Below are positions 13,775 to 64,000 of a DNA stretch of 64,000 nt, in pieces. The position numbers were made by a program, and so were the translations under genes. The DNA comes from Macrostomum lignano (taxonomy: Eukaryota), in assembly GCA_002269645.1 (NCBI GenBank), contig NIVC01000861.1, positions 362,360 to 426,359 on the forward strand, given 5' to 3'. The notes below the pieces were generated by a model that was not told the origin of the DNA, did no database searches, and was given only the letters and a program-made list of their open reading frames with translations. Numbering within the stretch: the first letter of the stretch is position 1; every line of letters begins with the position of its first letter.

Positions 13775-15592
13775 ATGACAAAAAATGCGCTGATAATATA
13801 TGCGGCTCTGGCCGCACTGCTCAGCTGCTCTCACGCGTACAGAATGTTCCAGTCCCGAATACCGAACGGCGACCGGGTCCCGAATCCGTGCCAGCAAGGC
13901 GACATCTGGGTCGGACTCGGACACCAGAGTCCCGCCGGTGCTGACGCTATAAATCCCTTCGGCTTGGACTTCAAGGCCGCCAGCTTCAGCTGGACAATCG
14001 ACCTGTGCCGCAAGGACTCGGACGGCGACGGAATCACGAACGGCCAAGAGCTCGGAGACCCCGACTGCGTGTGGAAGGTCGGTGCGGCTCCGGCGCGAAC
14101 GACTGGACTGTCCCACCCTGGCATCTGCCCGCTCGACTCCGCGACGTGCAAGAACTCGTGGACCGTGTGTCCGAAGGCCTTCAGCTGTCCAGCATTCGAA
14201 GAGCCCGGTGTTTTCGTGAGAAACTTCACCCTCAAACCGACTCCCGTGCCCGCCACTGAGACGACATACGTCTGTCAGGCGTTCGAGCTGAACAACACTG
14301 CCTCTCCGGTTCACCTGATCGGATCGAGGCCGATCATCGACAACAAGAACGTCATGCACCACATGATTATGTACGCCTGCAGTGTCAAGCCAGAACAGAC
14401 GCTGTTCGATAATCCACGGCAGTGTTTAATGGGCCACAGAAACTGCACCCAGATGATGAACCTTTGGGCCTACGGACTCGAAGGCGAGTGCATCAATAGC
14501 AACGCGGGGTTCCGAATCGGCGGTGATGGCTTTCGGTACGGAGTTTTGCAGCTTCACTGGAACAACCCGGCGAGGCATTCAGGCTACACCGACGCTTCTG
14601 GCTTCGCTCTCTACTTTACACAAAACCTGCGACCATCCGACTTGGGAACTGTGATGTATGGCGAGGGAAATCTCGTTCTCCCACCGCGACAGCCGTTGAT
14701 CAGCGTGAACCACACGTGCCCTTCGGTGTGCACTAACCGGTACCACACTGAGACTCGCTACATCACAGGAGTAGGCATCTACATGCACACCAACGGTATT
14801 AGAGGACGCATTTCTCTCTGGAGGAATGAAACTTTAGTGAGGGACATCTGGCCGCTCCAGGAATACAGTTACAACTCTCCAAAAGTTATTTTCTTGAACC
14901 AAACGGTTGAGTATCAACCCGGAGATGAATTGAAAACAGAGTGCTACTTTACCACACTGAAGAATGACCGGACGGTATTTTCTGGAGCCGCTAAAAATGA
15001 CGAAATGTGCCTGTCATTTCTGTGGTTGTATCCAAATAAGGCCAGGGTTCCTGCGTCAGAGAGACTGACCCAGTGTATGGCTATAGCTGCAATCAACTTG
15101 TGCTGGGTTGCAAGCAACATAGTTCCGCATGTGGAACGAGACTGTAACATCACGTCGATGAGGAGTGGAGAAATGCCGAATCGAGTGATGTCGGAAATGG
15201 CCGCCAACAACTGCTTTGCTCGGACTGGATGCGATCCAGCTTGTCGAAACTACCTGAACTTCACTCTGTGGCCCTTAAATGCTTGCTACGACCCGACAAG
15301 GTCGAGACAGATGGCTGAAGCCATGGCTTTGGGCATGGTACCGTCATCTAATCACGAAACAATCGCCCGTACTCTGTATGGACAGCGCTTCTGCGAGCAG
15401 GAGATCAATTTGTTGAATGCTCCAGCTCCAACGAAACTCATCGAGGCGCTGCCGGCTGCGCCGATTCTCCAAAAAGGCGGGTTGACCTCCGAGCACCTGC
15501 TGATCATCATCGTTGTGTGCAGCTGCCTGGGGTTTGTTCTGTTTTTGGCTCTGCTAACCTATCTGTCAATCAGGCTCAACCACAGAAGCTAA
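13775..15592 (+). CDS. Temptin-domain copper type II monooxygenase (DBH/MOXD1-like), copy 1, membrane-anchored, 605 aa
   Basis: Signal peptide; temptin-like IPNGDRVPNPC...GHQ...NPFG.DF...DSDGDG.TNGQELGDPDCVW...SHPG; CuH HHM + LHWNN; CuM site YMH (His->Tyr) + DEMC; C-terminal hydrophobic LLIIIVVCSCLGFVLFLALLTYL. Confidence 0.92.
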   Translation: MTKNALIIYAALAALLSCSHAYRMFQSRIPNGDRVPNPCQQGDIWVGLGHQSPAGADAINPFGLDFKAASFSWTIDLCRKDSDGDGITNGQELGDPDCVWKVGAAPARTTGLSHPGICPLDSATCKNSWTVCPKAFSCPAFEEPGVFVRNFTLKPTPVPATETTYVCQAFELNNTASPVHLIGSRPIIDNKNVMHHMIMYACSVKPEQTLFDNPRQCLMGHRNCTQMMNLWAYGLEGECINSNAGFRIGGDGFRYGVLQLHWNNPARHSGYTDASGFALYFTQNLRPSDLGTVMYGEGNLVLPPRQPLISVNHTCPSVCTNRYHTETRYITGVGIYMHTNGIRGRISLWRNETLVRDIWPLQEYSYNSPKVIFLNQTVEYQPGDELKTECYFTTLKNDRTVFSGAAKNDEMCLSFLWLYPNKARVPASERLTQCMAIAAINLCWVASNIVPHVERDCNITSMRSGEMPNRVMSEMAANNCFARTGCDPACRNYLNFTLWPLNACYDPTRSRQMAEAMALGMVPSSNHETIARTLYGQRFCEQEINLLNAPAPTKLIEALPAAPILQKGGLTSEHLLIIIVVCSCLGFVLFLALLTYLSIRLNHRS

Positions 15593-21200: not shown

Positions 21201-22123
21201 GCATCTAAGCAGTGCTAGTTTTGTGATCAATACAGGAGAAGAACAACAAATTGGCGATGTAGCAACGATTAAAGGGCTACTGATGAGCAGATAATCACTA
21301 ATTATACTTTGAACCATGCGGCTCTGCCCAGACAACCATTGTTGACCATAGCATAACTAGGTTGTGGTAATAACTCAAAACAGAGGTTTCCTATATGTAT
21401 GAGCTGTATTTTCTTATGAAGTGTCAAACAATTTTCCGACTTTAGGAATTTTTCAGCATTTTCATAAAAACTGGGGGCAAAATGCAATGCAGACAAAATC
21501 CGCGTGAAGCTAACTGCACTGCAGTAAAAATTAAAGTATTGCGGGAAACTCTCGGGGGGGGGGCAACTTCAGTGCTCCTCCTTCCTAGAGCGAGTCGCTC
21601 AGTGCACTCTTACGTCTTCAGGACTGCTCAATGTAATTTCAACTAGTCCAAGGCTTACTTGGATGCGATAAATGTTGTGAGAATATAAAGCATACATTCG
21701 TCAGCGTTACAACTAATATGTTACAAACTGAAAACATTGATTTCTTGAATCTTGGCAATGGGCTTACATGTAATCTCGATTGCTTGCAAATTTTTGTAGG
21801 AATTCTGTTTGAAACTTTCGTAGGAGCCAGGCCTGCGAGAAATACCTTTCTGTCTTGGAAGGAGAAAGAATAGTACTATAGTTTAAGTGTAATGCCTAAT
21901 CATAAAACTAATATTTATTGAAACATTCCATCAAATTTCAGACAAAGAAACAAGCTAATGTTATTTGAAAAGTTAAATACTCCACAAGGCAAACATTAAC
22001 CAGTCAAATGTTTTATAAACCGCAACCAAAAAGTAACACTTGGTTCGACTGCACGGACCAATGACTTAGTGTCAGTTTTTCAACTTGAATTTCACAACTA
22101 TTTGCAAGGCAGGTGTTCGGAGG

Positions 22124-23809
22124 TTAGGCGATGGTATTTGCCTGAGCTGGAGCAGCCTGTCGGTTCATCTCTGCCAGCATTTTGATCTCCTGCTCGCAAA
22201 ATCTCTGACCGAACAGAGTAGCCGAGATGGCCTGAGTCACTGCAGCATTGAGCTGAAAGACACCCAGAGCCAACACTTCGGCCATTTGACGCGAACGCTT
22301 CGGGTCGTAGCAGGCATTGTTGGGCCAGAGAGTGTTCTCCAGGTAGTTGCGGCACAGCGGGTCGCAGCCGGTCCGAGAGAAGCACTTGTTGGCGGCCATT
22401 TCAGAATAAACTCGTTTCGGCATGTCACCGTTTCGCATGGCGGTGATGTTGCAACCCCTCTCAACTTGGGGAGTGATGCCGCTCTCCACCCAGCACCGGT
22501 TGATTCCAGATTCAGCGACACAGTGTCCGAGCTTGTCATGGTTACTTTGGGCTACATTGTTCGGATAATAGTATATCAAAGCGAAACACATTTCATCTCT
22601 GGCGCCTTCTCCAAGGAAGATGGTAACATTGCTTTTTAGTGTGCTGTAGTAGCATTCGGTCTTTACTTCGTCACCTTTCCGGTATTCGATCGGTGGGTCG
22701 AAAGTGTGCACCTTCGGGGATTTGAAATCGTACACTTGAAGAGGAGACAGGTCTTTAATCATAGTTCCGTTTCTCCACAGCGAGATGCGTCCTTTAATGC
22801 CATAAGCGTGCATGTGAATGAGTACGGCGGTGATGTAGCGAGTCTCATTGTGGTACCAGTTAGTGCACACCGAAGGGCACGTGTGGTTCACGCTGATCAA
22901 CGGCTGTCGCGGTGGAAGAACAAGATTTATCTCGCCATACATAAGAGTTCCCAAGTCGTATGGTCGAAGGTTTTGTGCAAAGTAAAGAGCGAAGCCAGAA
23001 GCATCTGTGTAGTTAGAAATCCTCATCGGGTTGTTCCAGTGAAGCTGCAAAACTCCGTACCGAATACCCTCACCGCCAAATCGGAATCCCGCATTGCTAT
23101 TGATGCACTCGCCTTCGAGTCCGTAGGTCCAGAGGTTCATCAACTCAGTGCAGTTTCCAATGGGCATGAAACACGGTTGTGAATTATTAAAAAGCGTCTC
23201 TGCGGGCTTGACACTACAGACATACATAATCATGTGGTGCATGATGCTCTTGTTGTCAATGATTGGCCTCGATCCGATCAGGTGAACCGGAGAGGCAGTG
23301 TTGTTCAGCTCGAACGCCTGACAGATGTACGTTGTCTCTCTCGCAGGCACGGGAGTCGGTTTGAGGGTGAAGTTTCTCACGAAAACACCGGGCTCTTCGA
23401 ATGCTGGACAGCTGAAGGCCTTCGGACACACGGTCCACGAGTTCTTGCACGTCGCGGAGTCGAGCGGGCAGATGCCAGGGTGGGACAGTCCAGTCGTTCT
23501 CGACGGAGCCGCACCGACCTTCCACACGCAGTCGGGGTCTCCGAGCTCTTGGCCGTTCGTGAGTCCGTCGCCATCCGAGTCCTTGCGGCACAGGTCGACC
23601 GTCCACTGGAGCCCGGCCGCCTTGAAGTCCAAGCCGAAGGGGTTTCTCGCGTTAGCGCCGGCGGGACTCTGGTGTCCGACTCCGGCCCAGATGGCGCCTG
23701 GCTGGCACGGATTCGGGACGCGATCGCCGTTCGGGATTCGGGACTGGAAAATTTTGTGTGCGTGAGAGCAGCTGAGCAGTGCGGCCAGAGCCACAGAAAG
23801 CAGCAGCAT
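22124..23809 (-). CDS. Temptin-domain copper type II monooxygenase, copy 2, no C-terminal anchor (predicted secreted), 561 aa
   Basis: Intact single ORF with signal peptide, temptin domain, HHM, LHWNN, HMH, DEMC. Confidence 0.93.
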   Translation of the reverse strand: MLLLSVALAALLSCSHAHKIFQSRIPNGDRVPNPCQPGAIWAGVGHQSPAGANARNPFGLDFKAAGLQWTVDLCRKDSDGDGLTNGQELGDPDCVWKVGAAPSRTTGLSHPGICPLDSATCKNSWTVCPKAFSCPAFEEPGVFVRNFTLKPTPVPARETTYICQAFELNNTASPVHLIGSRPIIDNKSIMHHMIMYVCSVKPAETLFNNSQPCFMPIGNCTELMNLWTYGLEGECINSNAGFRFGGEGIRYGVLQLHWNNPMRISNYTDASGFALYFAQNLRPYDLGTLMYGEINLVLPPRQPLISVNHTCPSVCTNWYHNETRYITAVLIHMHAYGIKGRISLWRNGTMIKDLSPLQVYDFKSPKVHTFDPPIEYRKGDEVKTECYYSTLKSNVTIFLGEGARDEMCFALIYYYPNNVAQSNHDKLGHCVAESGINRCWVESGITPQVERGCNITAMRNGDMPKRVYSEMAANKCFSRTGCDPLCRNYLENTLWPNNACYDPKRSRQMAEVLALGVFQLNAAVTQAISATLFGQRFCEQEIKMLAEMNRQAAPAQANTIA

Positions 23810-24536
23810 TATGGTATACTAATTCGCTCGTGTATATCCGGATATAAATGCGTAATGCGTAACTTAATAGTATTTAGATGGAGGTCAATGATCTCTAATC
23901 TCTCTAAGACAGAAACCAAAAGAAGAATTTCTGTGCGGAAAGAGGGAGGTAGACAGAAACAGCTGTTTTAATATGGATACTCGTAATAAGAGGTGGGTAG
24001 TCAGCAGTAGTTTGGGCAGTCAGCAAGCATGTTTCAAGTTTGTCCTTCAACCCATTGCCCAGTGTATTGGGTTTGTATGGGGGTGGAACTGCACCAGGAA
24101 GAGCAGTGGTGTAAGAAGAAAGAGATTCACATTTTACTGGCCTCCTAGTAGTCTAACTTAGAGTAATGGCATTGCAACGCCTGCGTGAGCCCAGAGCTGC
24201 TTTTCTAGCATGCGTTGGAGGGCTACGGAAGAGTAGGAAACCATTCGGCAGCCGGATAAGCATCGATTTTTTCTAGTAGACTGGCATAATGCGTGTGACA
24301 GATAAACTCATTCAAGTTGGGGAATATGCTTGTGCGCATGCGTGGAACGTGCGTTATGAATTTCGGGCCAAGAAATTATTTTACCTATTCATTCGGTCCT
24401 GCGCCTCTGGATGAATAACTTCAATTAATCTATATTAAAAAAAGAGTTCAGCAAATTTTTGTTGCTCACGTTGCTCATTCGCGTGTCACATCTTCTTCGT
24501 TAGGACCTGCCCGTAGGACCTGGAGCTGACCCTCGA

Positions 24537-24900
24537 CTACGATGTGACCCGGCGACATATCAAAGCTTCGCAGACTTGGGGTTCTAATGATGAGAGGCTC
24601 AAGAAGATCTACCAAAAGGAAAAATCGCCAGAATTACCACCAACCATAAAGTTTCGACTCTCGCAGTTACGCACGGGACACTGTCGCCTCACTAACTACT
24701 GAAGTCAGATAGTGGGGCTGGCGCCCCCGAGCCTTTCCCCGAATGCGGGAGTACTGAAGACAAAGATCACTGGTTCCTGTGCCCTAAGTGAGACTGGCTT
24801 CGGCGAGATCTCGATGCGCACTTGCTTGAGGACTTAAGTAATGAAGACTTGGTGTTAAGAATCCTTCGGTCAGCCAAACCCGGAGTGGCTCTGGTCGGGG
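24537..24900 (+). mobile_element. LINE ORF2 3' relic (C-terminal zinc knuckle); second copy at 41220-41590
   Basis: LSQLRTGHCRLTNYW...PECGSTEDKDHWFLCPK, followed by a CA-rich tail. Confidence 0.6.
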
Positions 24901-26013
24901 ACTCGTTCCGACGACACACACACACACAGTAGCGGCAGCGCCTGTGAAAACAGCAGTGCCAACAGCAGCACCTACGGCGGCACCAGCAGCAGCGTCAAAA
25001 GCGGTACCAGCGGCCGGGACCTACACCTGCGAGGTGCGAACCTATGTCGCGCCCATTAGACGGCGACCGAAATTCGCGCCGGCCGCAGACTCATGGATGT
25101 CACAATTCTTTGCATCCCAATCGATCTTACCCTCCTGCAAGCTTCACCAAGAGCATCTGTGAAGTGGCGGCTGCTTAACGTGGCTCGTCTACGAAAACAA
25201 ACTGCCAGCGGACTGCGCCGCGACGAGCACCCGAATGATTGTGGAATGCCAGCATCACACGTGCTGCGGCCTGTCGACACGCTTCAACAAGCTGCTGGCC
25301 GTCGTCAACCTCACCTCGCTCAGCCACATCGGCGCTGAGAGAGCTTGCAACCTTAATTCGCAAGAGGATGGGCCGCTTGACTGTCCGTCCGGTCACAACG
25401 TCGATTGCGATCAAAGACCCCGCTTCAAAAGCCTCTCTTTTAAGTCCTAGCCTGGCGTAGCAGCAGGCCGTCAACAACAGCAGCACAAGCTAGAGCTGCT
25501 AGGGACCTGGACCGACTTCCGACAACGAGCGCACGTCTCTTCCTCGGGTCCGGCTCGCAGCTGATAGCAGCAACGTGATCTTTGACACCTTGCTGGACGT
25601 CACAATTTGTTAGAATTTACGAGCGTACATTCACTCTATAACTACTGATTTAGCTTGCAATATCCTGCCCCTGCCGCCTTTTCCTTGCCGCTTTTTCTAC
25701 ATTTGAATTTTGCCGCGCTTATTAATCCTTAAATGCTTGTGTTTTTTTTAGCATTCAATGTTCGATCTACATGTAAGTCTCTAATGGAACCAATAACTTA
25801 ACTTTTAAATATTGAAGTCCAACTTTGCGATGACGTGCGTACACAAGCTGTTACGCTCGTCATTTTCTTACATTCTAAACACAATAATCATTTCATTTAC
25901 AGACGCTATACATTACTATTTTTTAGACTCTTGATCGCCCAGCTACTTCAATAAAAGTTTTTTCGCTAGTAAACATTACAATAATATAGTAGATTTTTAT
26001 TTTATACAATGTG

Positions 26014-27232: not shown

Positions 27233-27286
<54 letters not shown>

Positions 27287-32610: not shown

Positions 32611-32619
32611 ACAAATATA

Positions 32620-35369: not shown

Positions 35370-35820
35370 TGATTTAAACGCAGGCGTGTGTACAAAGATG
35401 AGAGAGATGAAAGCCATTCCTTTGTGTGCTCACTGTTGTGTAGATTCCAGGCTGGCGCATGCAAGTTCCGATTTTTCGTCTAATCGTCATTATTGATGGA
35501 AGCCGTAAACCAATGCTACGCAAGTATCGGTGGCATCTGGGGCTGTAGTGAAGCAGCCCTGTGGCAAGACGTAGAGAAGCCCTCGACCAGACAGGTCTCC
35601 GGCGTTTCGCATTTGAGATCTGATCCTGAATCACACCACGAACCGTTTCACTCATGCTTGCGATCTGAGCACAGACGCTGTTGTGCTGGGCCAGATTTCT
35701 AAGCCTGGTAGCAGTCAAACTTGAAGTGTCGCATCGCCGTTTTAGAGTATCATTTTGGCATCTCAGTTGTGCTGAAGTGTTTCTCTCGGCCTTGAGTTTC
35801 TGCCTTAGCTGCTGCATGGT
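35370..35820 (-). mobile_element. P-element/THAP9-like transposase fragment
   Basis: WSRASLRLATGLLHYSPRCHRYLRSIGLRLPSIMTIRRKI...PG. Confidence 0.7.
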
Positions 35821-38530: not shown

Positions 38531-38817
38531 AGGAATTCTAGCGTGAATTCTCGTTGGCAAGGCTGAAATACTCAACTAGTTAAAGTGTTATGCCCGACAC
38601 AAAAAAAAATTTATAAAACAATTTATTCAATTTTACACAAGATCCAAGCTAACCTTTAAAAAGTAAGATACTCCCCCACCAGTTAAGCGTAAACCAGTCA
38701 AATGTTTTATAAACCGCAACCAAAAAGTAACACTTGGTTCGACTGCACGGACCAATGACTTAGTGTCAGTTTTTCAACTTGAATTTCACAACTATTTGCA
38801 AGGCAGGTGTTCGGAGG

Positions 38818-40503
38818 TTAGGCGATGGTATTTGCCTGAGCTGGAGCAGCCTGTCGGTTCATCTCTGCCAGCATTTTGATCTCCTGCTCGCAAAATCTCT
38901 GACCGAACAGAGTAGCCGAGATGGCCTGAGTCACTGCCGCATTGAGCTGAAAGACACCCAGAGCCAACACTTCGGCCATTTGACGCGAACGCTTCGGGTC
39001 GTAGCAGGCATTGTTGGGCCAGAGAGTGTTCTCCAGGTAGTTGCGGCACAGCGGGTCGCAGCCGGTCCGAGAGAAGCACTTGTTGGCGGCCATTTCAGAA
39101 TAAACTCGTTTCGGCATGTCACCGTTTCGCATGGCGGTGATGTTGCAACCCCTCTCAACTTGGGGAGTGATGCCGCTCTCCACCCAGCACTGGTTGATTC
39201 CAGACACTGCGACACAGTGTCCGAGCTTGTCATGGTTAGTTTGGGCTACATTGTTCGGATAGTAGTATACAAATGCGGCGCACATTTCATCTCTGGCGCT
39301 TTCCCCAAGGAAGATGGTAACGTTGGTTTTTAGTGTGCTGTAGTAGCATTCGGTCTTTACTTCGTCACCTTTCCGGTATTCAATCGGTGGGTCGAACTTT
39401 TGCAACTTCGGAGATTTGAAATCGTATACTTGAAGAGGAGACAGGTCTTTAATCATAGTTCCGTTTCTCCACAACGAGATGCGTCCTTTAATGCCATAGG
39501 TGTGCATGTGAATGAATGCTGCGGTGATGTAGCGAGTCTCAGTGTGATACCGGTTCGTGCACACCGAAGGGCACGTGTGGTTCACGCTGATCAACGGCTG
39601 TCGCGGTGGAAGAACGAGATTTATCTCGCCATACATAAGAGTTCCCAAGTCGTATGGTCGCAGGTTTTGTGTAAAGTAAAGAGCAAAGCCAGAAGCGTCG
39701 GTGTAGCCTGAATGTTTCATCGGGTTGTTCCAGTGAAGCTGCAAAACTCCGTACCGAAGGCCATCACCGCCGATTCGGAACCCCGCGTTGCTGTTGATGC
39801 ACTCACCTTCAAGTCCGTAGGCCCAGAGGTTTAGCAACTCAGTGCAGTTTCCACTCGGAAACAATTGACACTTTTGTGGACTATTGAAAAGTGTCTCTGC
39901 GGGTTTTGCAGTACAGGCATACATAATCATGTGGTGCATGACCTTGTTGTCAATGATTGGCCTCGATCCGATCAGGTGAACCGGAGAGGCAGTGTTGTTC
40001 AACTCGAACGCCTGACAGATGTACGTTGTCTCTCTCGCAGGCACGGGAGTCGGTTTGAGGGTGAAGTTCCTGACGGTCACGTTGACACTGTCAAGTGCTG
40101 GACAGCTGAAGGCCTTCGGACACACGGTCCACGAGTTCTTGCACGTCGCGGAGTCGAGCGGGCAGATGCCAGGGTGGGACAGTCCAGTCGTTCTCGCCGG
40201 AGCTGCTCCGACCTTCCACACGCAGTCGGGGTCTCCGAGCTCTTGGCCGTTCGTGAGTCCGTCGCCGTCTGAGTCCTTGCGGCACAGGTCGATCGTCCAC
40301 TGGAGCCCGGCCGCCTTGAAGTCCAAGCCGAAGGGGTTTCTCGCGTTAGCGCCGGCGGGACTCTGGTGACCGACTCCGGCCCAGATGGCGCCTGGCTGGC
40401 ACGGATTCGGGACGCGATCGCCGTTCGGGATTCGGGACTGGAAAATTTTGTGTGCGTGAGAGCAGCTGAGCAGTGTGGCCAGAGCCACAGGAAGCAGCAG
40501 CAT
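38818..40503 (-). CDS. Temptin-domain copper type II monooxygenase, copy 3, predicted secreted, 561 aa
   Basis: Intact ORF with all six Cu ligands. Confidence 0.93.
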   Translation of the reverse strand: MLLLPVALATLLSCSHAHKIFQSRIPNGDRVPNPCQPGAIWAGVGHQSPAGANARNPFGLDFKAAGLQWTIDLCRKDSDGDGLTNGQELGDPDCVWKVGAAPARTTGLSHPGICPLDSATCKNSWTVCPKAFSCPALDSVNVTVRNFTLKPTPVPARETTYICQAFELNNTASPVHLIGSRPIIDNKVMHHMIMYACTAKPAETLFNSPQKCQLFPSGNCTELLNLWAYGLEGECINSNAGFRIGGDGLRYGVLQLHWNNPMKHSGYTDASGFALYFTQNLRPYDLGTLMYGEINLVLPPRQPLISVNHTCPSVCTNRYHTETRYITAAFIHMHTYGIKGRISLWRNGTMIKDLSPLQVYDFKSPKLQKFDPPIEYRKGDEVKTECYYSTLKTNVTIFLGESARDEMCAAFVYYYPNNVAQTNHDKLGHCVAVSGINQCWVESGITPQVERGCNITAMRNGDMPKRVYSEMAANKCFSRTGCDPLCRNYLENTLWPNNACYDPKRSRQMAEVLALGVFQLNAAVTQAISATLFGQRFCEQEIKMLAEMNRQAAPAQANTIA

Positions 40504-46462: not shown

Positions 46463-48148
46463 TTAGGCGATGGTATTTGTCTGAGCTGGAGCAGCCGGTC
46501 GGTCCATCTCTGCCAGCATTTTGATCTCCTGCTCGCAAAATCTCTGACCGAACAGAGTAGCCGAGATGGCCTGAGTCACTGCCGCATTGAGCTGAAAGAC
46601 ACCCAGAGCCAACACTTCGGCCATTTGACGCGAACGCTTCGGGTCGTAGCAGGCATTGTTGGGCCAGAGAGTGTTCTCCAGGTAGTTGCGGCACAGCGGG
46701 TCGCAGCCTGTCCGAGAGAAGCACTTGTTGGCGGCCATTTCAGAATAAACTCGTTTCGACATGTCACCGTTTCGCATGGCGGTGATGTTGCAACCCCTCT
46801 CGATCTGAGGAGTGATGCCGCTCTCCACCCAGCACCGGTTGATTCCAGATACAGCGACACAGTGTCCGAGCTTGTCATGGTTAGTTTGGGCTACATTGTT
46901 CGGATAGTAGTATACAAATGCGAAGCACATTTCATCTCTGGTGCCTTTGCCATAGAAGATTGAAACGTTGGTTTTTAGTGTGCTGTAGTAGCATTCGGTC
47001 TTTACTTCGTCACCTTTCCGGTATTCGATCGGTGGGTCGAAAGCGTGAATCTCCGGAGAGTTATAATCGTACACTTGAAGAGGAGACAGGTCTTTAATCA
47101 TAGTTCCGTTTCTCCACAACGAGATGCGTCCTTTAATGCCATAAGCGTGCATGTGGATGAGTACGGCGGTGATGTAGCGAGTCTCATTGTGGTACCGGTT
47201 CGTGCACACCGAAGGGCAGGTGTGGTTCACGCTGATCAACGGCTGTCGCGGTGGGAGAACGAGATTTATCTCGCCATACATAAGAGTTCCCATGTCGTAT
47301 GGTCGAAGGTTTTGTGCAAAGTAAAGAGCAAAGCCAGATGCATCGGTGTAGCCTGAATGTTTCATCGGGTTGTTCCAGTGAAGCTGCAAAACTCCGTACC
47401 GAAGGCCATCACCGCCGATTCGGAACCCCGCGTTGCTGTTGATGCACTCACCTTCAAGTCCGTAGGCCCAGACGTTCATCAACTCGGTGCAGTTTTCAAT
47501 GAGCATTAAACACGGTTGTGGACTGTTGAAAAGTGTCTCTGCGGGTTTTGCAGTGCAGGCATACATAATCATGTGGTGCATGACGTTTTTGTTGTCAATG
47601 ATCGGCCTCGATCCGAGCAGGTGAACCGGAGAGGCAGTGTTGTTCAACTCGAACGCCTGACAGGATTAGGTGGTCTCAGTGGCGGGCACGGCAGTCGGTT
47701 TAAGGGTGAAGTTCCTGACGGTCACGTTGACACTGTCAAGTGCTGGACAGCTGAAGGCCTTCGGACACACGGTCCACGAGTTCTTGCACGTCGCGGAGTC
47801 GAGCGGGCAGATGCCAGGGTGGGACAGTCCAGTCGTTCTCGCCGGAGCTGCACCTACCTTCCACACGCAGTCGGGGTCTCCGAGCTCTTGGCCGTTCGTG
47901 AGTCCGTCGCCGTCCGAGTCCTTGCGGCACAGGTCGACCGTCCACTGGAGCCCGGCCGCCTTGAAGTCCATGCCGAATGGGTTTCTGGCGTTAGCGCCGG
48001 CGGGACTCTGGTGTCCGACTCCGGCCCAGATGGCGCCTGGCTGGCACGGGTTCGGGACGCGGTCGCCGTTCGGGATTCGGGACTGGAAAATTTTGTGCGC
48101 GTGAGAGCAGCTGAGCAGTGCAGCCAGAGCCACAGGAAGCAGCAGCAT
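46463..48148 (-). pseudogene. Temptin-domain copper monooxygenase, copy 4, with in-frame TAA at 47666-47668
   Basis: Both ORF pieces are in the same frame; paralogous TAC ATC reads TAA TCC here. Otherwise intact with all Cu ligands. Could be a consensus error. Confidence 0.8.
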
Positions 48149-49175: not shown

Positions 49176-49269
49176 CTCCCTATTATATACATTATATACT
49201 AGACAAGTAGAAAGCATATCTTTATAGATCTCAATTCTACAGAGAGAGTCTTGATTGACTTGAATTTGA

Positions 49270-49740: not shown

Positions 49741-49759
49741 TACGAAGGTCTCCTGCAGC

Positions 49760-50760
49760 CAACACGACGTCGATGTCCGTTTGACGCAGCTGATTAAAAT
49801 TTTCGGGTTTGCACGCTTCAGTAATTGATGTGTGTGGCCCGAGGTAAGTGAGTCTGGCTCGCGTAAAGGCGAGATAGATGCTGACAAAATGCTCAGCAGT
49901 TTCATCACTTGAGTTGCAGAAACTACAGTTGCACTACAGTGGCATTGCCCTGTAAGTACTGGTGCCTGGAGAAGCAGCCGTGACCCAAGAAGGTCATGGT
50001 GGCAGCCCGAATGTCTCCTCGCGAGAGGCGCAAGAGGAGCATTCGGAGTTGGTGAGAGGGCTGGGTGACCGGTACTGGGTCCTGATCCACGCTTTGATGC
50101 GCGAATCAATGACACAGACGGGAATCAGGACAAGGGGTTCGGGCCCGAGAGAGGAGCCGGAGACGCCAACTTTTGCCAGCTCATTCCCTCGGATCTTCAC
50201 GTGCCCCAGAACCCACTAAAGGGTAATTTTGTTTGTTGTAGCGTTGTCTCAGATACAGCGTTGAGTCAATGCCTCGGTGAAGACGCGATAGGCCTGACAC
50301 TCGTTAAGAATATTGAGGCACAGGTCACTACGTTGAACGAGGTTCCGCTTAGCAGGTGCTCTCATGTAGAGGAATTTGACGACGGCATCTAGTAGACGCC
50401 GCGTCGTTCTAGCCGCCTCACCCCTGACGAAGAGGTCGAGAGGCGGTAAATCAAGGAAGGCCCCCATGCTTGCAAAAGGCGTGGACCTAGTGGCGTTGCA
50501 GATAAGCCTACACACTCCACCCTGGATCGTGTTGAGCAACTCTGCATGGGTTTTGACCTGGGTGGCGCTAACACAGGCAACAGAAGCGTACGCAATGGCA
50601 GGTATAAACACAAAAATGTAGATCCACCAAAGACGCTTTGGTGATAAACCCCAGAAAGTGCCAAGTGCTCGCCGGAGCTGGGCTGGGATGGCCTGCTTGG
50701 CTTTTACTTTCACGTGGAAGGAGCAGTTTAACCAGGTGGTCTAGAATGACTCCGAGGCAT
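49760..50760 (-). mobile_element. R1/LOA-like LINE 3' fragment, internally deleted
   Basis: WGLSPKRLWWIY...P...Y, NATRSTP...LDLPPLDL, GNELAKVG.SGSSLGPEP; same family as 59673-60738. Confidence 0.8.
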
Positions 50761-55635: not shown

Positions 55636-57561
55636 TCAGCCACTCGCTTCATTGTCGTACACTTTATAGACGCTCGACTTGTCCGGAGCGCCCTGCTGTC
55701 CGCTGCTGAGCCCGGCAGCCGAGCTCGCACCCTTCAACTTGATTGACAGAAAGATTAGCAGAGCCAGAATCAGAATGAACCCCAGGCAGCTGCACACAAC
55801 GATGATGATCAGCAGGTGCTCCGAGCTCAGGCCGCCCTTCTGCGACGTTGGAGTAGCGGGGGGCCTAGCGGTGGTTGTTGTACGATCTGGAGCAGCCGGT
55901 CGGTCCATCTCTGCCAGCATTTTGATCTCCTGCTCGCAAAATCGCTGACCGAACAGAGTAGACGATATGGCCAGAGTAACAGCTGAATTGAGCTGAAATA
56001 AACCCAGAGCCAACACTTCGGCCATTTGACGCGAGCGCTTCGGGTCGTAGCAGGCATTGTTGGGCCAGAGAGTGTTCTCCAGGTAGTTGCGGCACAGCGG
56101 GTCGCAGCCCGTTCGAGAGAAGCACTTGTTGGCGGCCATTTCAGAATAAACTCGGTTTGGGATTTCACCGTTTCGCATCGCGGTGATGTTGCAACCCCTC
56201 TCGATTTGAGGAGTGATGCGGCTCCGCAACCAACACGAATTGATGCCCGACACACCGATGCAGCGTCCGAGCTTATCGTCGGTGCTCACGGAGACATCGT
56301 TAGGATAATAATATAGAAATGAAAGGCACATCTCGTCGCTAGTACCTTCGCCAAAGAAGATAGTAACGTTGGTTTTTTGTGTGTTAAAATAACATTCGGT
56401 CTTTACTTCGTCACCTTTCCGGTATTCGATCGGTGGGTCGAAAGCATGAATCTCCGGTGAGTTGTAATCGTACACTTGAAGAGGAGACAGGTCTTTAATC
56501 ATAGTTCCGTTTCTCCACAACGAGATGCGTCCTTTAATGCCATAGGTGTGCATGTGGATAGTTGCCCCGGTGATGTAGCGAGTCTCATTGTGGTACCGGT
56601 TCGTGCACACCGAAGGGCAGGTGTGGTTCACGCTGATCAACGGCTGTCGCGGTGGGAGAACGAGATTTCCCTCGCCATACATCACAGTTCCCAAGTCGTA
56701 TGGTCGCAGGTTTTGTGTAAAGTAAAGAGCAAAGCCAGAAGCGTCGGTGTAGCCTGAATGCCTCGCCGGGTTGTTCCAGTGAAGCTGCAAAACTCCGTAC
56801 CGAAAGCCATCACCGCCGATTCGGAACCCCGCGTTGCTGTTGAAGCACTCACCTTTGACTCCGTAACCCCAGAGGTTCAACATCTCGGTGCAGTTTCCAA
56901 GAGCCATGAAACACTGTTTTGGATTATCGAACAGCGTCTGTTCTGGCTTGACACTGCAGGCGTACATAATCATGTGGTGCATGACGTTCTTGTTGTCGAT
57001 GATCGGCCTCGATCCGATCAGGTGAACCGGAGAGGCTGTGTTGTTCAGCTCGAACGCCTGACAGATGTAGGTGGTCTCATTGGCGGGCACGGGAGTCGGT
57101 TTGAGGGTGAGGTTTCTCATGGTCACGTTGGCACCGTCCAGTGCTGGACAGCTGAAGGCCTTCGGACACACGGTCCACGAGTTCTTGCACGTCGCGGAGT
57201 CGAGCGGGCAGATGCCAGGGTGGGACAGTCCAGTCGTTCGCGCTGGAGCCGCACCGACCTTCCACACGCAGTCGGGGTCTCCGAGCTCTTGGCCGTTCGT
57301 GAGTCCGTCGCCGTCCGAGTCCTTGCGGCACAGGTCGACCGTCCACTGGAGCCCGGCCGCCTTGAAGTCCATGCCGAATGGGTTTCTGGCGTTAGCGCCG
57401 GCGGGACTCTGGTGTCCGACTCCGGCCCAGATGGCGCCTGGCTGGCACGGGTTCGGGACGCGGTCGCCGTTCGGGATTCGGGACTGGAACGACTTGTGCG
57501 CGTGAGAGCAGCTGAGCAGTGCAGCCAGAGCCACAGAAAGCAGCAGCATAGTCGTTTTCAT
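55636..57561 (-). CDS. Temptin-domain copper type II monooxygenase, copy 5, membrane-anchored, 641 aa
   Basis: Intact ORF, all Cu ligands, Thr/Pro linker, TM LLIIIVVCSCLGFILILALLIFL and a short cytosolic tail. Confidence 0.93.
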   Translation of the reverse strand: MKTTMLLLSVALAALLSCSHAHKSFQSRIPNGDRVPNPCQPGAIWAGVGHQSPAGANARNPFGMDFKAAGLQWTVDLCRKDSDGDGLTNGQELGDPDCVWKVGAAPARTTGLSHPGICPLDSATCKNSWTVCPKAFSCPALDGANVTMRNLTLKPTPVPANETTYICQAFELNNTASPVHLIGSRPIIDNKNVMHHMIMYACSVKPEQTLFDNPKQCFMALGNCTEMLNLWGYGVKGECFNSNAGFRIGGDGFRYGVLQLHWNNPARHSGYTDASGFALYFTQNLRPYDLGTVMYGEGNLVLPPRQPLISVNHTCPSVCTNRYHNETRYITGATIHMHTYGIKGRISLWRNGTMIKDLSPLQVYDYNSPEIHAFDPPIEYRKGDEVKTECYFNTQKTNVTIFFGEGTSDEMCLSFLYYYPNDVSVSTDDKLGRCIGVSGINSCWLRSRITPQIERGCNITAMRNGEIPNRVYSEMAANKCFSRTGCDPLCRNYLENTLWPNNACYDPKRSRQMAEVLALGLFQLNSAVTLAISSTLFGQRFCEQEIKMLAEMDRPAAPDRTTTTARPPATPTSQKGGLSSEHLLIIIVVCSCLGFILILALLIFLSIKLKGASSAAGLSSGQQGAPDKSSVYKVYDNEASG

Positions 57562-59297: not shown

Positions 59298-60964
59298 TTA
59301 TATAAAAAATAGCCAATATTGCTGGGTACTCTTGAAGTGAAGCGAAAGTTCCGTTAGCAAGAGGTTGGGAGAAATCAGCCGACACGCGCGTGATGCGTGA
59401 ACAAGCATATAGCCTTGGCAGCAACTCCCCCAGATGAAAAAGACCTGCAAGCCTAAAAATAGCCCAGATGATCGACGAGCGAGAAGCCCAGCCATGCGAC
59501 CCTCGCATGATGCATGAACCACCTCTGGCCGACACTGCCTATTAAGCCTCCAAGTCATTGTCTTTCTCGTCTTCGCAGGAATGCTGTCACTCAAATGACT
59601 CGGAAAGCCGGGAAAAATGGAGGGCACTGCTTCTGGATAGAGTCGCTTCCGTTCCAATGGCCGAAATACGACTTACTTTGACTTAGCTGCAGGGCTGTCC
59701 CGGAGGGGACACTTGACACAGCGGGAAGGCGCGGGCGCCCATTCCTCTAATCCCTGAACGGCCGACGCGTCGCTATTGACGGAGGGTTGGCGCCGCCCAG
59801 GGAATCCCCCAGTGTCGCCAGCAGCTATAGTGCTCTCTGGAAAGGAGAGTTCAGCCCTGCGGGTGGCCCGAAGGTAGCGCATGAGCTGGTTAAAGTTTTC
59901 GGGTTTGCACGCTTCAGTAATAGATGTGTGTGGCCCGAGGTAAGTGAGTCTGGCCCACGTAAAGGCGGGACAGATGCTGACGAAATGCTCAGCGGTTTCG
60001 TCACCTGAGTTGCAGAAACTGCAGATGGCGTTGGTGGCGTTGCCCTGCAAGTACTGGTGCCTAGAGAAGCAGCCGTGACCTGAGAGGGTCATGGTGGCAG
60101 CCCGGATGTCTCTACGCGAGAGGCGCAAGAGGAGCTTCCGGAGCTGGTGAGAGGGCTGAGGGACAGCGCCTCTGGATTCCCTGCAGGTGGTGCAGTTCGC
60201 CCAAGTCGAGCGGTGCTGAGTCCTGATCCACGCTTTGATGCGCGAGTCGATGACACAGCCGGGAATCGGGACAAGAGGTTCGGGACCGAGAGAGGAGCCG
60301 GAGGCACCAACTTTTGCAAGGGTGTCGGCCAACTTATTCCCTCGGATCCCCACATGCCCCGGAACCCTCATTTTGTTAGTGGGTGATTTTGTAATTTTGT
60401 AATTTTGTTAATTTTGTTGGTGGAAGTCAGTAAGAGGGAAATTTTGTTATTTTGGGTAATTTTGTTGGTGGAACCCAACATGTTGAGGAGTCTGATACAA
60501 TCGAGGACTGTAGCAGAATTGGTGCAGCAGCCACTGATGGCGTGCAAGGCAGCTTGGCTGTCCGAATGGAAAATGATGTTCTTACCAGTAACGCCAGTGG
60601 CGAGAAGCTCTGCAGTGCAGGAGCTGATGGCCAGAACTTCATTTTGGAAGACACTGGAGTTGACCCCAGTGTATTGAGCGTGGGTAGCGATGACCCTCCC
60701 GTCCAGAAAGATTCCAACACCAAATCCGGTGTGAAATCCTTCTAGAGATTGCACAAAACACTCTGGAATAAAGTGCTCAGAGCACACCTTGGAATGCTTT
60801 GAAGGTTTGAAATCTTTGCGGCGGCGAGCAGCTATCCATTTTTTCTTAACATCATTGTCCTTCGGGAAGGAGTGAAATGAGATTGCTGACGAACTTGAGG
60901 CCCTGTTGCTACAAACAAATGCTGTGCAGAAGTGACTGTTTCCTGGCTTTTTAGCTTGCTGCAT
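59298..60964 (-). pseudogene. THAP-domain ORF interrupted by a LINE insertion
   Basis: 5' part CTAFVC..FHSFP..W..VCSEHF (60739-60964) joins in frame to the 3' part RKRLYPEAVPSIF (to 59672). Confidence 0.8.
59673..60738 (-). mobile_element. 5'-truncated R1/LOA-like LINE (RNase H + zinc knuckle)
   Basis: SVFQNEVLAI, IFHSDSQAAL, VPGHVGIRGNKLADTLAK, CSFCNSGDETAEHFVSICP; tail ccctgcagctaagtcaa(a)gtaag, also seen at ~51658-51690. Confidence 0.88.
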
Positions 60965-61100
60965 CGTATGCTGATTGAATTATTTTTCGCTACACATTCA
61001 TCAGTTTTCTTAATTAATCAACCATATATTTTTTTTCATTTTTACTTAGCAGTCAGTACAACCATATGTGCGCTTGATGAGATTTTAGACAGATTTTAGA

Positions 61101-61397
61101 CAGTGGGATAGTGGGGTGCCCCGGTCCCCACGCAGTTCACTAAAATGAGTGGCTGCGGCGTTAAAATGGTGCCTGCAGCGCTAAAATGAGTTTCTGCGGT
61201 GCTAAAATGAGTGTCTGCGGTGCTAAAATGAGTGTCTGCGGTGCTAAAATGAGTGTCTGCGGTGCTAAAATGAGTGTCTGCGGTGCTAAAATGAGTGTCT
61301 GCGGTGCTAAAATGAGTGTCTGCGGTGCTAAAATGAGTGCCTGCGGCGCTAAAATGGTAGAAGTTCGTGGGGACCAGGGCACCGCACTATCTCACTG
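61101..61397. mobile_element. MITE with ~32-bp TIRs enclosing a 21-bp minisatellite
   Basis: cagtgggatagtggggtgccccggtccccacg vs reverse complement cagtgagatagtgcggtgccctggtccccacg (3 mismatches); core unit gctaaaatgagtgtctgcggt. Confidence 0.8.
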
Positions 61398-62322: not shown

Positions 62323-62337
62323 GCCTATATAAAATAA
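62323..62337 (+). promoter_or_regulatory. TATA box upstream of monooxygenase copy 6
   Basis: gcctatataaaa ~70 nt upstream of ATG 62402. Confidence 0.5.
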
Positions 62338-62401
62338 AAGATGCGTGGAAAAGAATGAACGACAGAGCCGCAAATCTGCAGCTTTGAACCCGACCCGAAT
62401 C

Positions 62402-64000
62402 ATGAAACTTGGAATCAGCTTAATAGCGACTGCAGCCGTTGTGCTGCAGACTGTACACGGCTACTCAAGTTTCAAGTCGAGGATACCCAACGGAGATCGC
62501 GTCCCGAACCCGTGCCAGGTGGGCACCATCTGGGCCGGAGTGGGGCACGAGAGTGCGGTTGGAGCCGACACTCGCAACAAGTTCGGTTTAGACTTCAAGG
62601 CGGCCGGGCTCCAGTGGACGGTCGACCTGTGCCGCAAGGACTCGGACGGCGACGGACTCACGAACGGCCAAGAGCTCGGAGACCCCGACTGCGTGTGGAA
62701 GGTCGGAGCCACTCCGGCGCGTACGACTGGACTGTCCCACCCTGGAATTTGCGAGTTCGGCTCCACAAAATGCAGCAACGCGTGGAACGTGTGCCCAAAA
62801 GCATTCAGCTGTCCAGCCATGAATGACCCCAGTGTGACCGTGAGAAACTTCACCATCAACAAGAACACCCCGGTTCCAGCGAAGGAAACCACGTATGTCT
62901 GTCAGGCGTTCGAGCTGAACAACACCGCCACGCCTGTTCACCTGATCGGATCAAAGCCAATCATTGACAACAAGAACGTCATGCACCACATGATCATGTA
63001 CGCCTGCTCTTCGAAGCCGAATCAGACGTTTTTCGACGCCCCGCAGGAGTGCTTTATGGCCCGCTCGGACTGCAATGAGATAGTCAATCTGTGGGCATTC
63101 GGGCTCGAGGGCGAGTGCTATAACAACAACACCGGCTATCGCATCGGAGGCGAGGGCTATCGCTACGCAATGCTGGAGCTCCACTGGAACAATCCGGCTA
63201 AGCTCAGTACATATACAGACTCATCTGGCTTGGCGCTCTACTTCACCCCCAACCTGAGAAAATACGACCAGGGCACTGCAATGTACGGCGAAGGCAATCT
63301 CGTGCTTCCGCCGCGTCAGCCAGTGGTTAATTTTAACCACACTTGCCCGTCGGTGTGCACGGAGAAGTACCACACGGAGACGCGCTACATCACCGGAGCC
63401 GGCATCCACATGCACGGCTACGGAGTGCAGGGCCGCATCTCGCTATGGCGAAATGGAACTCTCGTCAAGGATTTGCATCCGCTGCAGGCCTACGATTACA
63501 ACTCGCCTAAAATGAACATGTTCGATCCGCCAATCGAATACCGCAGAGGTGACGAAGTTAAAACTGAATGCTACTTCAGCACTCTAAAGTCCAATAAAAC
63601 AATTTACTTCGGCGAAGGAACTAGTGACGAAATGTGCCTGTCGTTTCTGTCCTATTATCCCAACAATGTCAGCAAGCCGAATTCTGAAAAGCTGGGCAGC
63701 TGCATCGCCGTCTCCGGAATCAGTGCTGGGTGCAGAGCGCATCGAGCCTCACATAGAGCGGGAATGCAACATCACAGACATGCGAAACGGCAACCTCACT
63801 GAACAGGTATCAGCCGAAATGACAGCCAATGGATGCTTTCTCCAAGACCGGCTGCAATCCAAAATGCCGTGACTATCTCAACAACACCCTGTGGCGCGTC
63901 GAACGCCTGCCTACGATCCGAAGCGAGCGCTTCAGATGACCGAGACAATGGCCACGGGATATCTGATAAATCAGTCACGCAAGCCGACCTTTATTAAGAC
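62402..64000 (+). CDS. Temptin-domain copper type II monooxygenase, copy 6 (most divergent); indels after ~63720; runs off window
   Basis: MKLGISLIATAAVVLQTVHG signal peptide, temptin domain, HHM, LHWNN, HMH, DEMC. Homologous sequence continues in shifted frames (IEPHIERECNITDMRNG; KTGCNPKCRDYLNNTLW; YDPKR). Confidence 0.85.

What the first reader, a model, noticed from the sequence alone, without database searches (positions are those of the whole stretch)
13775..64000. Six-gene intronless cluster of temptin-copper monooxygenase fusions that looks like a diversifying secreted/surface enzyme repertoire
Seen: six paralogs (+,-,-,-,-,+) with signal peptide, a temptin-like domain containing a DxDxDG loop, and two copper domains with no DOMON. 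Established: temptin is a component of the Aplysia water-borne pheromone blend, and DBH/TBH/PHM use the same HH..H / HxH..M ligands. Inference: the local expansion, with variation in anchoring, active-site residues and domain content, suggests a chemical-signalling or chemical-defence family hydroxylating different amines or peptides.
Basis: partly seen in the sequence, partly recalled or inferred. Interest (0 to 1): 0.82.

Follow-up and report, generated by a model that had tools for sequence, protein, structure and literature searches.

The report
Flatworm temptin–copper monooxygenase gene cluster
This is a real tandem cluster of six intron-free genes in the flatworm Macrostomum lignano, each encoding a copper monooxygenase with a temptin domain in front. 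The gene type has been known since 2009, and the copies evolve under ordinary purifying selection, so the find is genuine but not very surprising.

Summary
Six single-exon paralogs (+,-,-,-,-,+) each encode a signal peptide, Temptin_C (with a DSDGDG loop), Cu2_monooxygen, Cu2_monoox_C and a Cys-rich helical C-terminal domain. None has a DOMON domain.

The window is the last 64 kb of Macrostomum lignano contig NIVC01000861.1.

Corrections:
- g6's scrambled 3' end is contig-end indel error. Overlapping contigs carry an intact 650-aa gene.
- g4 has an in-frame TAA here.
- "Domain content" does not vary.

Real variation:
- g1, g5 and g6 are type I membrane proteins.
- g2-g4 lost the anchor through a shared frameshift/truncation.
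- g1 has Tyr in place of one CuM histidine.

The temptin/monooxygenase hybrid was described in 2009 as a lophotrochozoan trait. It is common and multi-copy in molluscs.

Pairwise dN/dS is 0.15-0.32 in the domain-level and whole-gene comparisons. Gene conversion homogenises the copies. "Diversifying" is therefore not supported.

The substrate is unknown. The peptide-binding residues of PHM are absent.

Verdict: a lineage-specific, probably retrogene-founded expansion of a known but biochemically uncharacterised enzyme family. Interest is moderate to low.

The parts
13775..15592 (+). g1: 605-aa temptin-Cu monooxygenase. It has a signal peptide, a TM helix (about residues 568-602) and a 6-residue cytoplasmic tail. 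The first CuM His is replaced by Tyr (IYMH). The 5' two-thirds have been converted by the g2-g5 group.
   Evidence: Annotated in GenBank (P0126). Copies on two other contigs also read YMH.
22124..23809 (-). g2: 561-aa soluble paralog with no TM and all six Cu ligands. An out-of-frame remnant of the juxtamembrane motif LTSEHL overlaps and follows the stop codon.
   Evidence: Against the 98% copy on contig 4862, dN/dS is 0.165.
38818..40503 (-). g3: 561-aa soluble paralog with all six Cu ligands. It lies in a 3.5-kb segmental duplicate of the g2 locus (21879-25383 vs 38577-42082, 94.1% identity).
46463..48148 (-). g4: soluble-type paralog with an in-frame TAA at 47666-47668 (codon 161). It is either a recent pseudogene or carries an assembly error.
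   Evidence: The copy on contig 757 has TAC ATC at that site but is 3'-truncated. dN/dS between the two copies is 0.15.
55636..57561 (-). g5: 641-aa type I membrane paralog with all six Cu ligands (H195 H196 H261 / H336 H338 M411), a TM helix at about 576-616 and a cytoplasmic tail containing YKVY.
   Evidence: Annotated in GenBank (P0121).
62402..64000 (+). g6: the most divergent paralog. It is intact to about residue 442, then shows several 1-bp indels, and is cut by the contig end. The true product is 650 aa with a TM helix and a tail containing YLYNEY.
60368..60964 (-). THAP-domain ORF, a remnant of a P-element/THAP9-like transposon in the g5-g6 spacer. A related repeat lies at 49788-50214 and 59884-60367.
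35374..35817 (-). ORF resembling the HTH domain of P-element transposase, in the g2-g3 spacer. The match is weak.

Best explanation
The region is a lineage-specific tandem array in Macrostomum lignano of the lophotrochozoan temptin/DBH-like copper monooxygenase family.

Domain order (shown). Each gene encodes:
- a cleavable signal peptide;
- a loop-rich, disulfide-stabilised temptin module with an invariant DSDGDG loop of the calcium-binding type, in the place where DBH has DOMON;
- the two beta-sandwich copper domains of the PHM/DBH fold, with CuH (His-His...His) and CuM (His-x-His...Met);
- a helical C-terminal domain with eight conserved Cys;
- in the ancestral form, a stalk, one TM helix and a short tail with a Tyr-based sorting motif.

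Mechanism (inferred from the family). The enzymes face the lumen of the secretory pathway or the outside of the cell. They take electrons from ascorbate, activate O2 at CuM and hydroxylate a C-H bond. The substrate is unknown and is not a glycine-extended peptide.

Evolution (partly shown):
- An intronless founder, probably a retrogene, was duplicated in tandem. Molluscan homologs and neighbouring M. lignano genes have introns.
- A shared frameshift/truncation removed the anchor in the ancestor of g2-g4, giving soluble secreted forms.
- g1 lost one CuM ligand.
- g4 is damaged or decaying.
- The copies stay under purifying selection and repeatedly exchange sequence by gene conversion.
For: Identity and source:
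- The exact g1 and g5 proteins are encoded on GCA_002269645.1 contig NIVC01000861.1.
- Relatives carry Macrostomum lignano names.

Architecture and fold:
- Pfam gives the three domains; sequence matches DBH and PHM.
- The AlphaFold model has pLDDT 89.2 and pTM 0.80.
- Foldseek gives DBH 7e-26 and PHM about 1e-19.

Ligands:
- 119 of 121 family members keep all six Cu ligands. The exceptions are g1/P0002 and the degenerate P0006.

Anchoring:
- Kyte-Doolittle TM segments appear only in g1, g5 and g6.
- An LTSEHL remnant lies out of frame after the g2-g4 stops.

Selection and conversion:
- dN/dS is 0.15-0.32. It is 0.15-0.17 between the diverged contig copies of g2 and g4.
- Identity is mosaic.
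- The dispersed copy P0001 is 97.3% identical to g5 from codon 24 to stop+7 only.

Intron contrast:
- Every M. lignano locus looked up (P0001, P0004, P0006, P0130) has a gene range equal to the CDS length, and the six window genes are single ORFs.
- The Sinanodonta homolog spans 20 kb for 587 aa.
- M. lignano genes average 4.9 introns (PMC5730564).

Other:
- The Macrostomum sequences form one clade in a neighbour-joining tree.
- The GenBank models for g1, g5 and g6 come from an RNA-seq-based annotation.
- The family was described before (PMC2762978). A "tyramine beta-hydroxylase/temptin" protein is a major protein of abalone nacre (PMC6003135).
Against: - No enzyme of this family has been assayed. 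Copper binding, ascorbate dependence and substrate are all inferred.
- The Tyr conserved four residues after the Met ligand in both DBH and PHM is Phe in 99 of 121 family members, so the substrate pocket differs from both characterised enzymes.
- I found no tissue or paralog-specific expression data for M. lignano.
- g2 and g3 have no full-length model in the deposited annotation. There is only a 136-aa partial model, on other contigs.
- The retrogene origin rests only on intron absence. No poly(A) tract or target-site duplication is visible, and none would be expected at this age.
- Calcium binding by the temptin loop is inferred from the motif and a sub-threshold TSP3 match.
Confidence: 0.75

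Rival explanations
1. One reading: a repertoire under diversifying selection, in which each paralog hydroxylates a different amine or peptide for chemical signalling or chemical defence.
For: - The copies differ in anchoring and in one CuM ligand.
- Residues next to the Met ligand differ between paralogs: LSF, FAL, AAF and FAF.
- A patch at about codons 375-450 is strongly diverged between g5 and g2-g4.
- Stand-alone temptin is an attractant in Aplysia and Biomphalaria (PMC10075465).
Against: - dN/dS is 0.15-0.32 gene-wide. In the diverged patch it is 0.08-0.34, with dS saturating, which indicates old sequence or conversion from another paralog rather than positive selection.
- Gene conversion homogenises the copies.
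- No expression or activity data exist.
- The peptide-clamp residues of PHM are absent.
Confidence: 0.12
2. The proteins are mainly non-catalytic. They would act as binding, matrix or cue proteins through the temptin module, like secreted temptin or shell-matrix proteins, with the copper domains as a scaffold.
For: - g1 lacks a CuM His, and the dispersed paralog P0006 has lost most ligands but keeps an open frame.
- M. lignano has a temptin-only minigene, P0130, made from a g5-like copy by a 1305-bp in-frame deletion of the enzyme part.
- A family member is a structural component of nacre.
Against: - 119 of 121 members, including g2-g6, keep all six copper ligands.
- The copper domains are under the same purifying selection as the temptin domain.
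Confidence: 0.1
3. The array is an assembly artefact: uncollapsed haplotypes or mis-joined repeats of one or two real genes.
For: - Mlig_3_7 is a redundant PacBio assembly, with 180 Mb in blocks at least 95% identical.
- The window ends at a contig end with obvious indel errors.
- Contigs 757, 416, 4862 and 3975 repeat parts of the cluster and differ in structure in the g2-g4 zone.
Against: - The paralogs within the window differ by 6-26% in DNA, with dS from 0.12 to above 1. They have different spacers, TE content and orientations on one contig.
- The g5-g6 junction is independently present in two other contigs.
- Distinct g1-, g2-, g4-, g5- and g6-type sequences recur on other contigs.
Confidence: 0.03

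Closest known systems
Temptin/mono-oxygenase hybrid gene of Lophotrochozoa (Aplysia DBH-like protein AAY42041, Pomatoceros, Lottia; Takahashi et al. 2009, PMC2762978)
   Same: The domain order is the same: an N-terminal temptin module in place of DOMON, then Cu2_monooxygen and Cu2_monoox_C. Identity to molluscan, brachiopod and bryozoan members is 35-45% over the whole ectodomain. The eight-Cys C-terminal region is conserved.
   Different: - This is a flatworm example.
- The genes are intronless, whereas a bivalve homolog spans 20 kb.
- They form a six-gene array with anchored and soluble forms and one ligand-altered copy.
Dopamine beta-hydroxylase / tyramine beta-hydroxylase / MOXD1 (DOMON-containing copper type II monooxygenases)
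   Same: DBH is the best solved match (4zel, 7e-30 by sequence, 7e-26 by fold). The six Cu ligands are identical, the core disulfides are shared, and both membrane-bound and soluble forms exist.
   Different: - There is no DOMON domain.
- The C-terminal helical domain is not alignable to the DBH dimerisation domain by sequence or by Foldseek.
- The Tyr at Met+4 is Phe.
- No role in monoamine synthesis has been shown.
Peptidylglycine alpha-hydroxylating monooxygenase (PHM/PAM)
   Same: The two-domain copper core is the same. The layout is type I membrane with a cytosolic sorting tail and soluble variants.
   Different: The match is weaker (about 1e-16). The substrate-clamp residues R240/N316/Y318 are T/L/F here. 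There is no PAL domain.
Temptin (Aplysia water-borne attractant) and the Pfam family Temptin_C, PF24784
   Same: The N-terminal 100 residues match PF24784 at about 1e-38 and are 60% identical to Aplysia temptin over the aligned part (87% of the query). They share the GVGH, NPFG, DSDGDGxxNGxELGDPxCxW and SHPG motifs.
   Different: - Temptin proper is a protein of about 100-200 aa with no enzyme domains.
- The module is not mollusc-specific. Stand-alone, often membrane-tethered versions occur in Trichoplax, a nemertean, an annelid, a fluke, green algae, oomycetes and a dinoflagellate at 43-64% identity.
- A confident model of the module (pLDDT 91) has no Foldseek match in the PDB. The published EGF-like assignment is therefore not borne out here.

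Membership tests
[quoted passage not shown] | N-terminal copper domain with the CuH ligands His-His...His | tested here: met
   PF01082 is above its cut-off in all six. MHHM and LHWNNP are present in g1-g6. H195, H196 and H261 are 120-121/121 across the family.
[quoted passage not shown] | C-terminal copper domain with the CuM ligands His-x-His...Met | tested here: met
   PF03712 is above its cut-off in all six. IHMH and DEMC are present in g2-g6. g1 alone reads IYMH, so it does not meet this feature.
[quoted passage not shown] | Double beta-sandwich catalytic fold | tested here: met
   The AlphaFold model has pLDDT 89. Foldseek gives 4zel 7e-26 and PHM entries about 1e-19 over about 300 columns.
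[quoted passage not shown] | Copper- and ascorbate-dependent hydroxylation activity | not testable with these tools
   This needs recombinant protein and assays.
DBH/TBH/MOXD subfamily | N-terminal DOMON domain | tested here: not met
   No PF03351 hit at E<=0.01. The N-terminal module is loop-rich, not a beta-sandwich. UniProt's automatic name "DOMON domain-containing protein" is a misnomer.
DBH/TBH/MOXD subfamily | C-terminal two-helix dimerisation domain | tested here: inconclusive
   A helical C-terminal domain exists at residues 426-553. It is not aligned to 4zel by Foldseek and has no sequence match in the PDB or Pfam.
PHM / PAM | Peptide C-terminus clamp (R240, N316, Y318) and the PAL partner domain | tested here: not met
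   The equivalents are T334, L413 and F415 in g5. The family majority is hydrophobic/F/F. No PAL domain is found.
Lophotrochozoan temptin/mono-oxygenase hybrid (Takahashi et al. 2009) | Temptin module directly N-terminal to the two monooxygenase domains, in a lophotrochozoan | tested here: met
   Pfam domain order. The closest relatives outside Macrostomum are molluscan, brachiopod and bryozoan proteins with the same three Pfam domains. Definition taken from PMC2762978.
Temptin (secreted protein attractant) | Small secreted protein consisting of the temptin domain alone, with attractant activity | tested here: not met
   The domain is present, but the proteins are 561-650 aa enzymes. Attractant activity cannot be tested here. 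A temptin-only derivative exists elsewhere in the genome (P0130).

The most novel reading that the evidence does not exclude
The temptin module may be an ancient, pan-eukaryotic, metal-binding cell-surface domain. It has an invariant GH, a near-invariant SHPG and a DSDGDG loop from algae and oomycetes to animals. In this family it would serve as a built-in docking, calcium-switch or redox/copper-handling partner for an extracellular monooxygenase, filling the still unexplained role of DOMON in DBH. The enzymes would hydroxylate an extracellular target such as a mucus or matrix component or a waterborne cue, rather than a neurotransmitter. Free "pheromone" temptins would then be enzyme-less derivatives of the kind caught forming in M. 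lignano (P0130).
Probability: 0.12. Interest if true: 0.65.

Novelty: new member of a known kind. Interest (0 to 1): 0.3.

Why it matters
The family is widespread and heavily duplicated in molluscs, brachiopods, bryozoans and, as shown here, a flatworm. It appears in shell-matrix and infection-response datasets. It is routinely mislabelled as DBH, TBH, MOXD1 or "DOMON domain-containing". No member has a known substrate.

M. lignano is transgenic- and RNAi-tractable. A compact intronless set is therefore a convenient place to find out what these enzymes do and what the temptin module contributes. The set offers:
- anchored forms;
- soluble forms;
- a ligand-altered form;
- a ligand-dead form;
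- a temptin-only form.

In itself the cluster is an ordinary tandem expansion shaped by purifying selection and gene conversion.

Tried and rejected
- Uncollapsed alleles within the window. Rejected on divergence and distinct flanks.
- g6 as a truncated or pseudogene variant. Rejected: it is contig-end indel error.
- g4 as a "temptin-less" domain variant. Rejected: one in-frame TAA splits an otherwise collinear ORF.
- Positive selection. Domain-wise and 50-codon sliding NG86 windows gave no sustained dN/dS above 1. No codon site-model software was available.
- Temptin as an EGF-like fold. The confident domain model has no PDB match by Foldseek (E<=10) or phmmer.
- Homology of the C-terminal domain. 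Nothing was found in Pfam at E<=10 or the PDB. The big protein database also returned nothing, but that search appears to return only proteins of similar length, so it shows only that no stand-alone version exists.
- Other genes hidden in the spacers. Only TE remnants and sub-threshold matches were found.
- Expression data for M. lignano. Literature and supplement searches by gene ID and by name found nothing.
- Full-length annotated models for g2 and g3. None is on record.
Distances between the conserved temptin His/Asp residues and the copper sites could not be measured.
Full report
**What is there**

The window holds six homologous single ORFs:

| Gene | Coordinates | Strand |
|---|---|---|
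| g1 | 13775-15592 | + |
| g2 | 22124-23809 | - |
| g3 | 38818-40503 | - |
| g4 | 46463-48148 | - |
| g5 | 55636-57561 | - |
| g6 | 62402 to the window end | + |

- Pfam places Temptin_C (PF24784), Cu2_monooxygen (PF01082) and Cu2_monoox_C (PF03712) in that order, far above the curated cut-offs, and finds no DOMON. The g4 query in that call was the ORF downstream of its stop, so g4's temptin part rests.
- The best solved relative by sequence is human dopamine beta-hydroxylase (4zel, 7e-30). PHM follows at about 1e-16.
- An AlphaFold model of g5, built on 121 family sequences, is confident (pLDDT 89.2, pTM 0.80).
- Its copper core matches DBH at 7e-26 and PHM at about 1e-19 by Foldseek.

**Where it comes from**

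- The exact g1 and g5 proteins are encoded on Macrostomum lignano assembly GCA_002269645.1 (Mlig_3_7), contig NIVC01000861.1 (426,359 bp).
- The coordinates show that the window is the last 64 kb of that contig.
- This explains g6. After about residue 442 the frame changes several times within 250 bp.
- The start of contig NIVC01000416.1 and an internal part of NIVC01000757.1 overlap the last 7-10 kb of the window at 99.7-99.8% identity. They differ by 1 and 8 mismatches respectively, plus 17 and 14 gaps.
- Both carry an intact 650-aa g6 (P0004) with a TM anchor, followed by a KBP_C gene and an ankyrin-repeat gene.
- The g6 "variant" is thus contig-end indel error, and the array ends with g6.
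- Upstream of g1 lie a LicD-family ORF and a PHO4 phosphate-transporter exon.
- The spacers hold minisatellites and THAP/P-element-like transposon remnants, and no further convincing genes.

**Real differences between the copies**

- g1, g5 and g6 end in a stalk, a strongly hydrophobic TM helix and a cytoplasmic tail. The tail is 6 residues in g1. In g5 and g6 it is about 25-40 residues with YKVY or YLYNEY motifs.
- g2, g3 and g4 stop at ...NTIA. Just past the stop the juxtamembrane motif LTSEHL survives in another frame. Their common ancestor therefore lost the anchor through a frameshift/truncation, leaving soluble secreted forms.
- All six keep the three CuH histidines and the CuM methionine.
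- g1 alone has Tyr for the first CuM histidine. The same change is in g1 copies on two other contigs, so it is not an error.
- Among 121 family members only g1 and the dispersed, fully degenerate M. lignano paralog P0006 lack any ligand.
- g4 has an in-frame TAA at 47666-47668, where TAC ATC has become TAA TCC.
- The 96.7%-identical g4 copy on contig 757 has the Tyr codon but loses its last ~75 codons to a rearrangement.
- dN/dS between the two g4 copies is 0.15. g4 was therefore constrained until recently, and its present status cannot be settled here. It may be a recent pseudogene or carry assembly errors.
- There is no variation in domain content.

**Selection and sequence exchange**

- Pairwise Nei-Gojobori dN/dS is 0.15-0.32 for every pair over the shared region.
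- It stays below 1 in every mature-protein domain where dS is above zero, and in all 50-codon windows with appreciable divergence. Only the signal peptide (g1 pairs) and the last window exceed 1.
- Identity along the genes is sharply mosaic.
- Against g2-g5, g1 is 8-12% diverged over its first ~900 nt (dS 0.16-0.29) and about 36% diverged over the last ~680 nt (dS above 1.8). Fisher p is below 1e-30.
- g1 and g2 are identical over a 30-codon linker where g3 and g4 differ.
- A dispersed copy on contig NIVC01000362.1 (P0001) is 97.3% identical to g5, without gaps, from codon 24 to 7 nt past the stop. Its signal peptide and flanks are unrelated.
- These are the marks of gene conversion, within the array and between loci.
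- The family is being held similar, not driven apart.

**Origin**

- The six window genes are single ORFs, and every other M. lignano member I looked up (P0001, P0004, P0006 and the minigene P0130) has a gene range equal to its CDS.
- Neighbouring genes have introns.
- The species averages 4.9 introns per gene (PMC5730564).
- A bivalve homolog spreads 587 codons over 20 kb.
- The Macrostomum sequences form one clade.
- The simplest reading is an intronless founder, probably a retrogene, that was later amplified. This step is inference.

**What is already known**

- Takahashi et al. (2009, PMC2762978) described exactly this architecture. It has temptin at the N-terminus and the two monooxygenase domains behind it, with no DOMON.
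- They found it in Aplysia, Pomatoceros and Lottia and called it a lophotrochozoan synapomorphy.
- My database search finds the same three-domain proteins in many molluscs, often in multiple copies per genome, and in Lingula and Watersipora. They carry names such as DBH-like, TBH-like, MOXD1 homolog or Temptin.
- An abalone nacre proteome lists a "tyramine beta-hydroxylase/temptin" protein as a major component (PMC6003135).
- Snail transcriptome studies read such genes as dopamine-converting enzymes (PMC5685644). Nothing tested here supports that assignment.
- g1, g5 and g6 are already GenBank proteins from the RNA-seq-based annotation.
- UniProt's label "DOMON domain-containing protein" for them is wrong.

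**How it probably works**

- Shown: the fold, the ligands and the topology.
- Inferred from the PHM/DBH family: two uncoupled copper sites, electrons from ascorbate, O2 activation at CuM and C-H hydroxylation. The catalytic part would face the secretory lumen or the outside of the cell.
- The substrate is unknown.
- The PHM residues that clamp the peptide C-terminus (R240, N316, Y318) are T, L and F in g5 and hydrophobic across the family.
- The Tyr shared by DBH and PHM at Met+4 is Phe in 99 of 121 members.
- A peptidylglycine substrate is therefore unlikely, and the pocket is not that of DBH either.

**The temptin module**

- It is not a molluscan peculiarity.
- Stand-alone versions at 43-64% identity occur in Trichoplax, a nemertean, an annelid, a fluke, green algae, oomycetes and a dinoflagellate. 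Many have a C-terminal hydrophobic anchor.
- They share an invariant core: GH, NxFG, DSDGDGxxNGxELGDPxCxW and (S/T)(H/N)PG.
- A confident model of the module alone (pLDDT 91.3) has no structural match in the PDB and no sequence match.
- Its fold is thus not represented among solved structures, and the published EGF-like assignment is not supported here.
- Its DSDGDG loop resembles thrombospondin type-3 calcium sites only below threshold.
- M. lignano also has a 165-aa minigene (P0130). It was made from a g5-like copy, promoter and 3'UTR included, by a 1305-bp in-frame deletion that removes the whole enzyme and leaves signal peptide, temptin, stalk and part of the anchor.

**Verdict**

- The finding is real and well described.
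- Its interpretation is only partly right. This is a known gene type, expanded locally in a flatworm under purifying selection with gene conversion.
- Two of the apparent variants are a contig-end artefact and a single stop codon.
- The open question of interest belongs to the whole family: what does a temptin-fronted, DOMON-less copper monooxygenase hydroxylate?
- M. lignano offers a tractable set of natural variants to address it.

Noticed in passing
L012 8001-8498 (NIVC01001840.1), protein P0130: A 165-aa temptin-only minigene. The DNA matches g5 from 86 nt upstream of the ATG (TATA box included) to codon ~133, then jumps to the stalk, TM region and 3'UTR. A 1305-bp in-frame deletion has removed the monooxygenase and C-terminal domains, and a later frameshift shortened the anchor. 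It shows how a free temptin can arise from the fusion.
   Followed up: yes
L005 10001-11923 (NIVC01000362.1), protein P0001: A dispersed intronless paralog. Its body is 97.3% identical to g5, without gaps, from codon 24 to stop+7. Its signal peptide resembles that of the distant paralog P0006, and its flanks are unrelated. This looks like ectopic gene conversion.
   Followed up: partly
L007 10001-11902 (NIVC01000723.1), protein P0006: A 633-aa paralog with an open frame, a temptin domain and a TM anchor. Five of the six copper-ligand positions are changed or deleted (R-H, gap, Y-x-Q, T), so it is a likely pseudoenzyme.
   Followed up: partly
window 63720-64000; L003, L004: The last ~300 bases of the window carry several 1-bp indels relative to two overlapping contigs. 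This is typical unpolished contig-end error in this PacBio assembly, and gene calls there (the 439-aa model P0128) are truncated by it.
   Followed up: yes
L009, L010, L011 (contigs NIVC01004862.1, NIVC01000757.1, NIVC01003975.1): Redundant copies of the g2-g4 part of the cluster differ from the window by 2-3% (dS 0.07-0.10) and in structure. On contig 757 the g4 copy is 3'-truncated and the following gene is g2-like (98% to g2, 93.5% to g3). The g5-g6 part is 99.8% identical between contigs. These may be haplotypes or homeologs of the neopolyploid genome; copy number is unresolved.
   Followed up: partly
window 506-1788, 2533-2853, 4003-4285, 6404-7448, 9177-10052, 29018-29879, 61140-61356: Long minisatellite arrays with units of 20-30 nt and up to 50 copies, plus a (TTAG)n run. 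They create long spurious ORFs such as 540-1793, 6351-7154 and 9197-10090.
   Followed up: no
window 7489-7977 (-) and 10466-11719 (-): An exon-like ORF matches the PHO4 phosphate transporter family (1e-41), and an ORF has a LicD-family match (2e-9). They appear to be the neighbouring genes upstream of the array.
   Followed up: no
window 60368-60964 (-), 35374-35817 (-), 49788-50214 / 59884-60367: THAP-domain and P-element-transposase-like ORFs, with a 78%-identical repeat pair in two spacers. These are transposon remnants that may have helped the duplications.
   Followed up: no
protein databases: UniProt names the M. lignano proteins "DOMON domain-containing protein", and NCBI names the molluscan homologs DBH-, TBH-, MOXD1- or PAM-like. 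None has a DOMON or PAL domain. Papers have read them as dopamine-converting enzymes on that basis.
   Followed up: partly
temptin module, g5 residues 23-145 (window 57127-57495, -): The module is 43-64% identical to proteins of green algae, oomycetes, a dinoflagellate and Trichoplax. A confident model has no structural relative in the PDB. It is a highly conserved extracellular domain of unknown biochemistry.
   Followed up: partly
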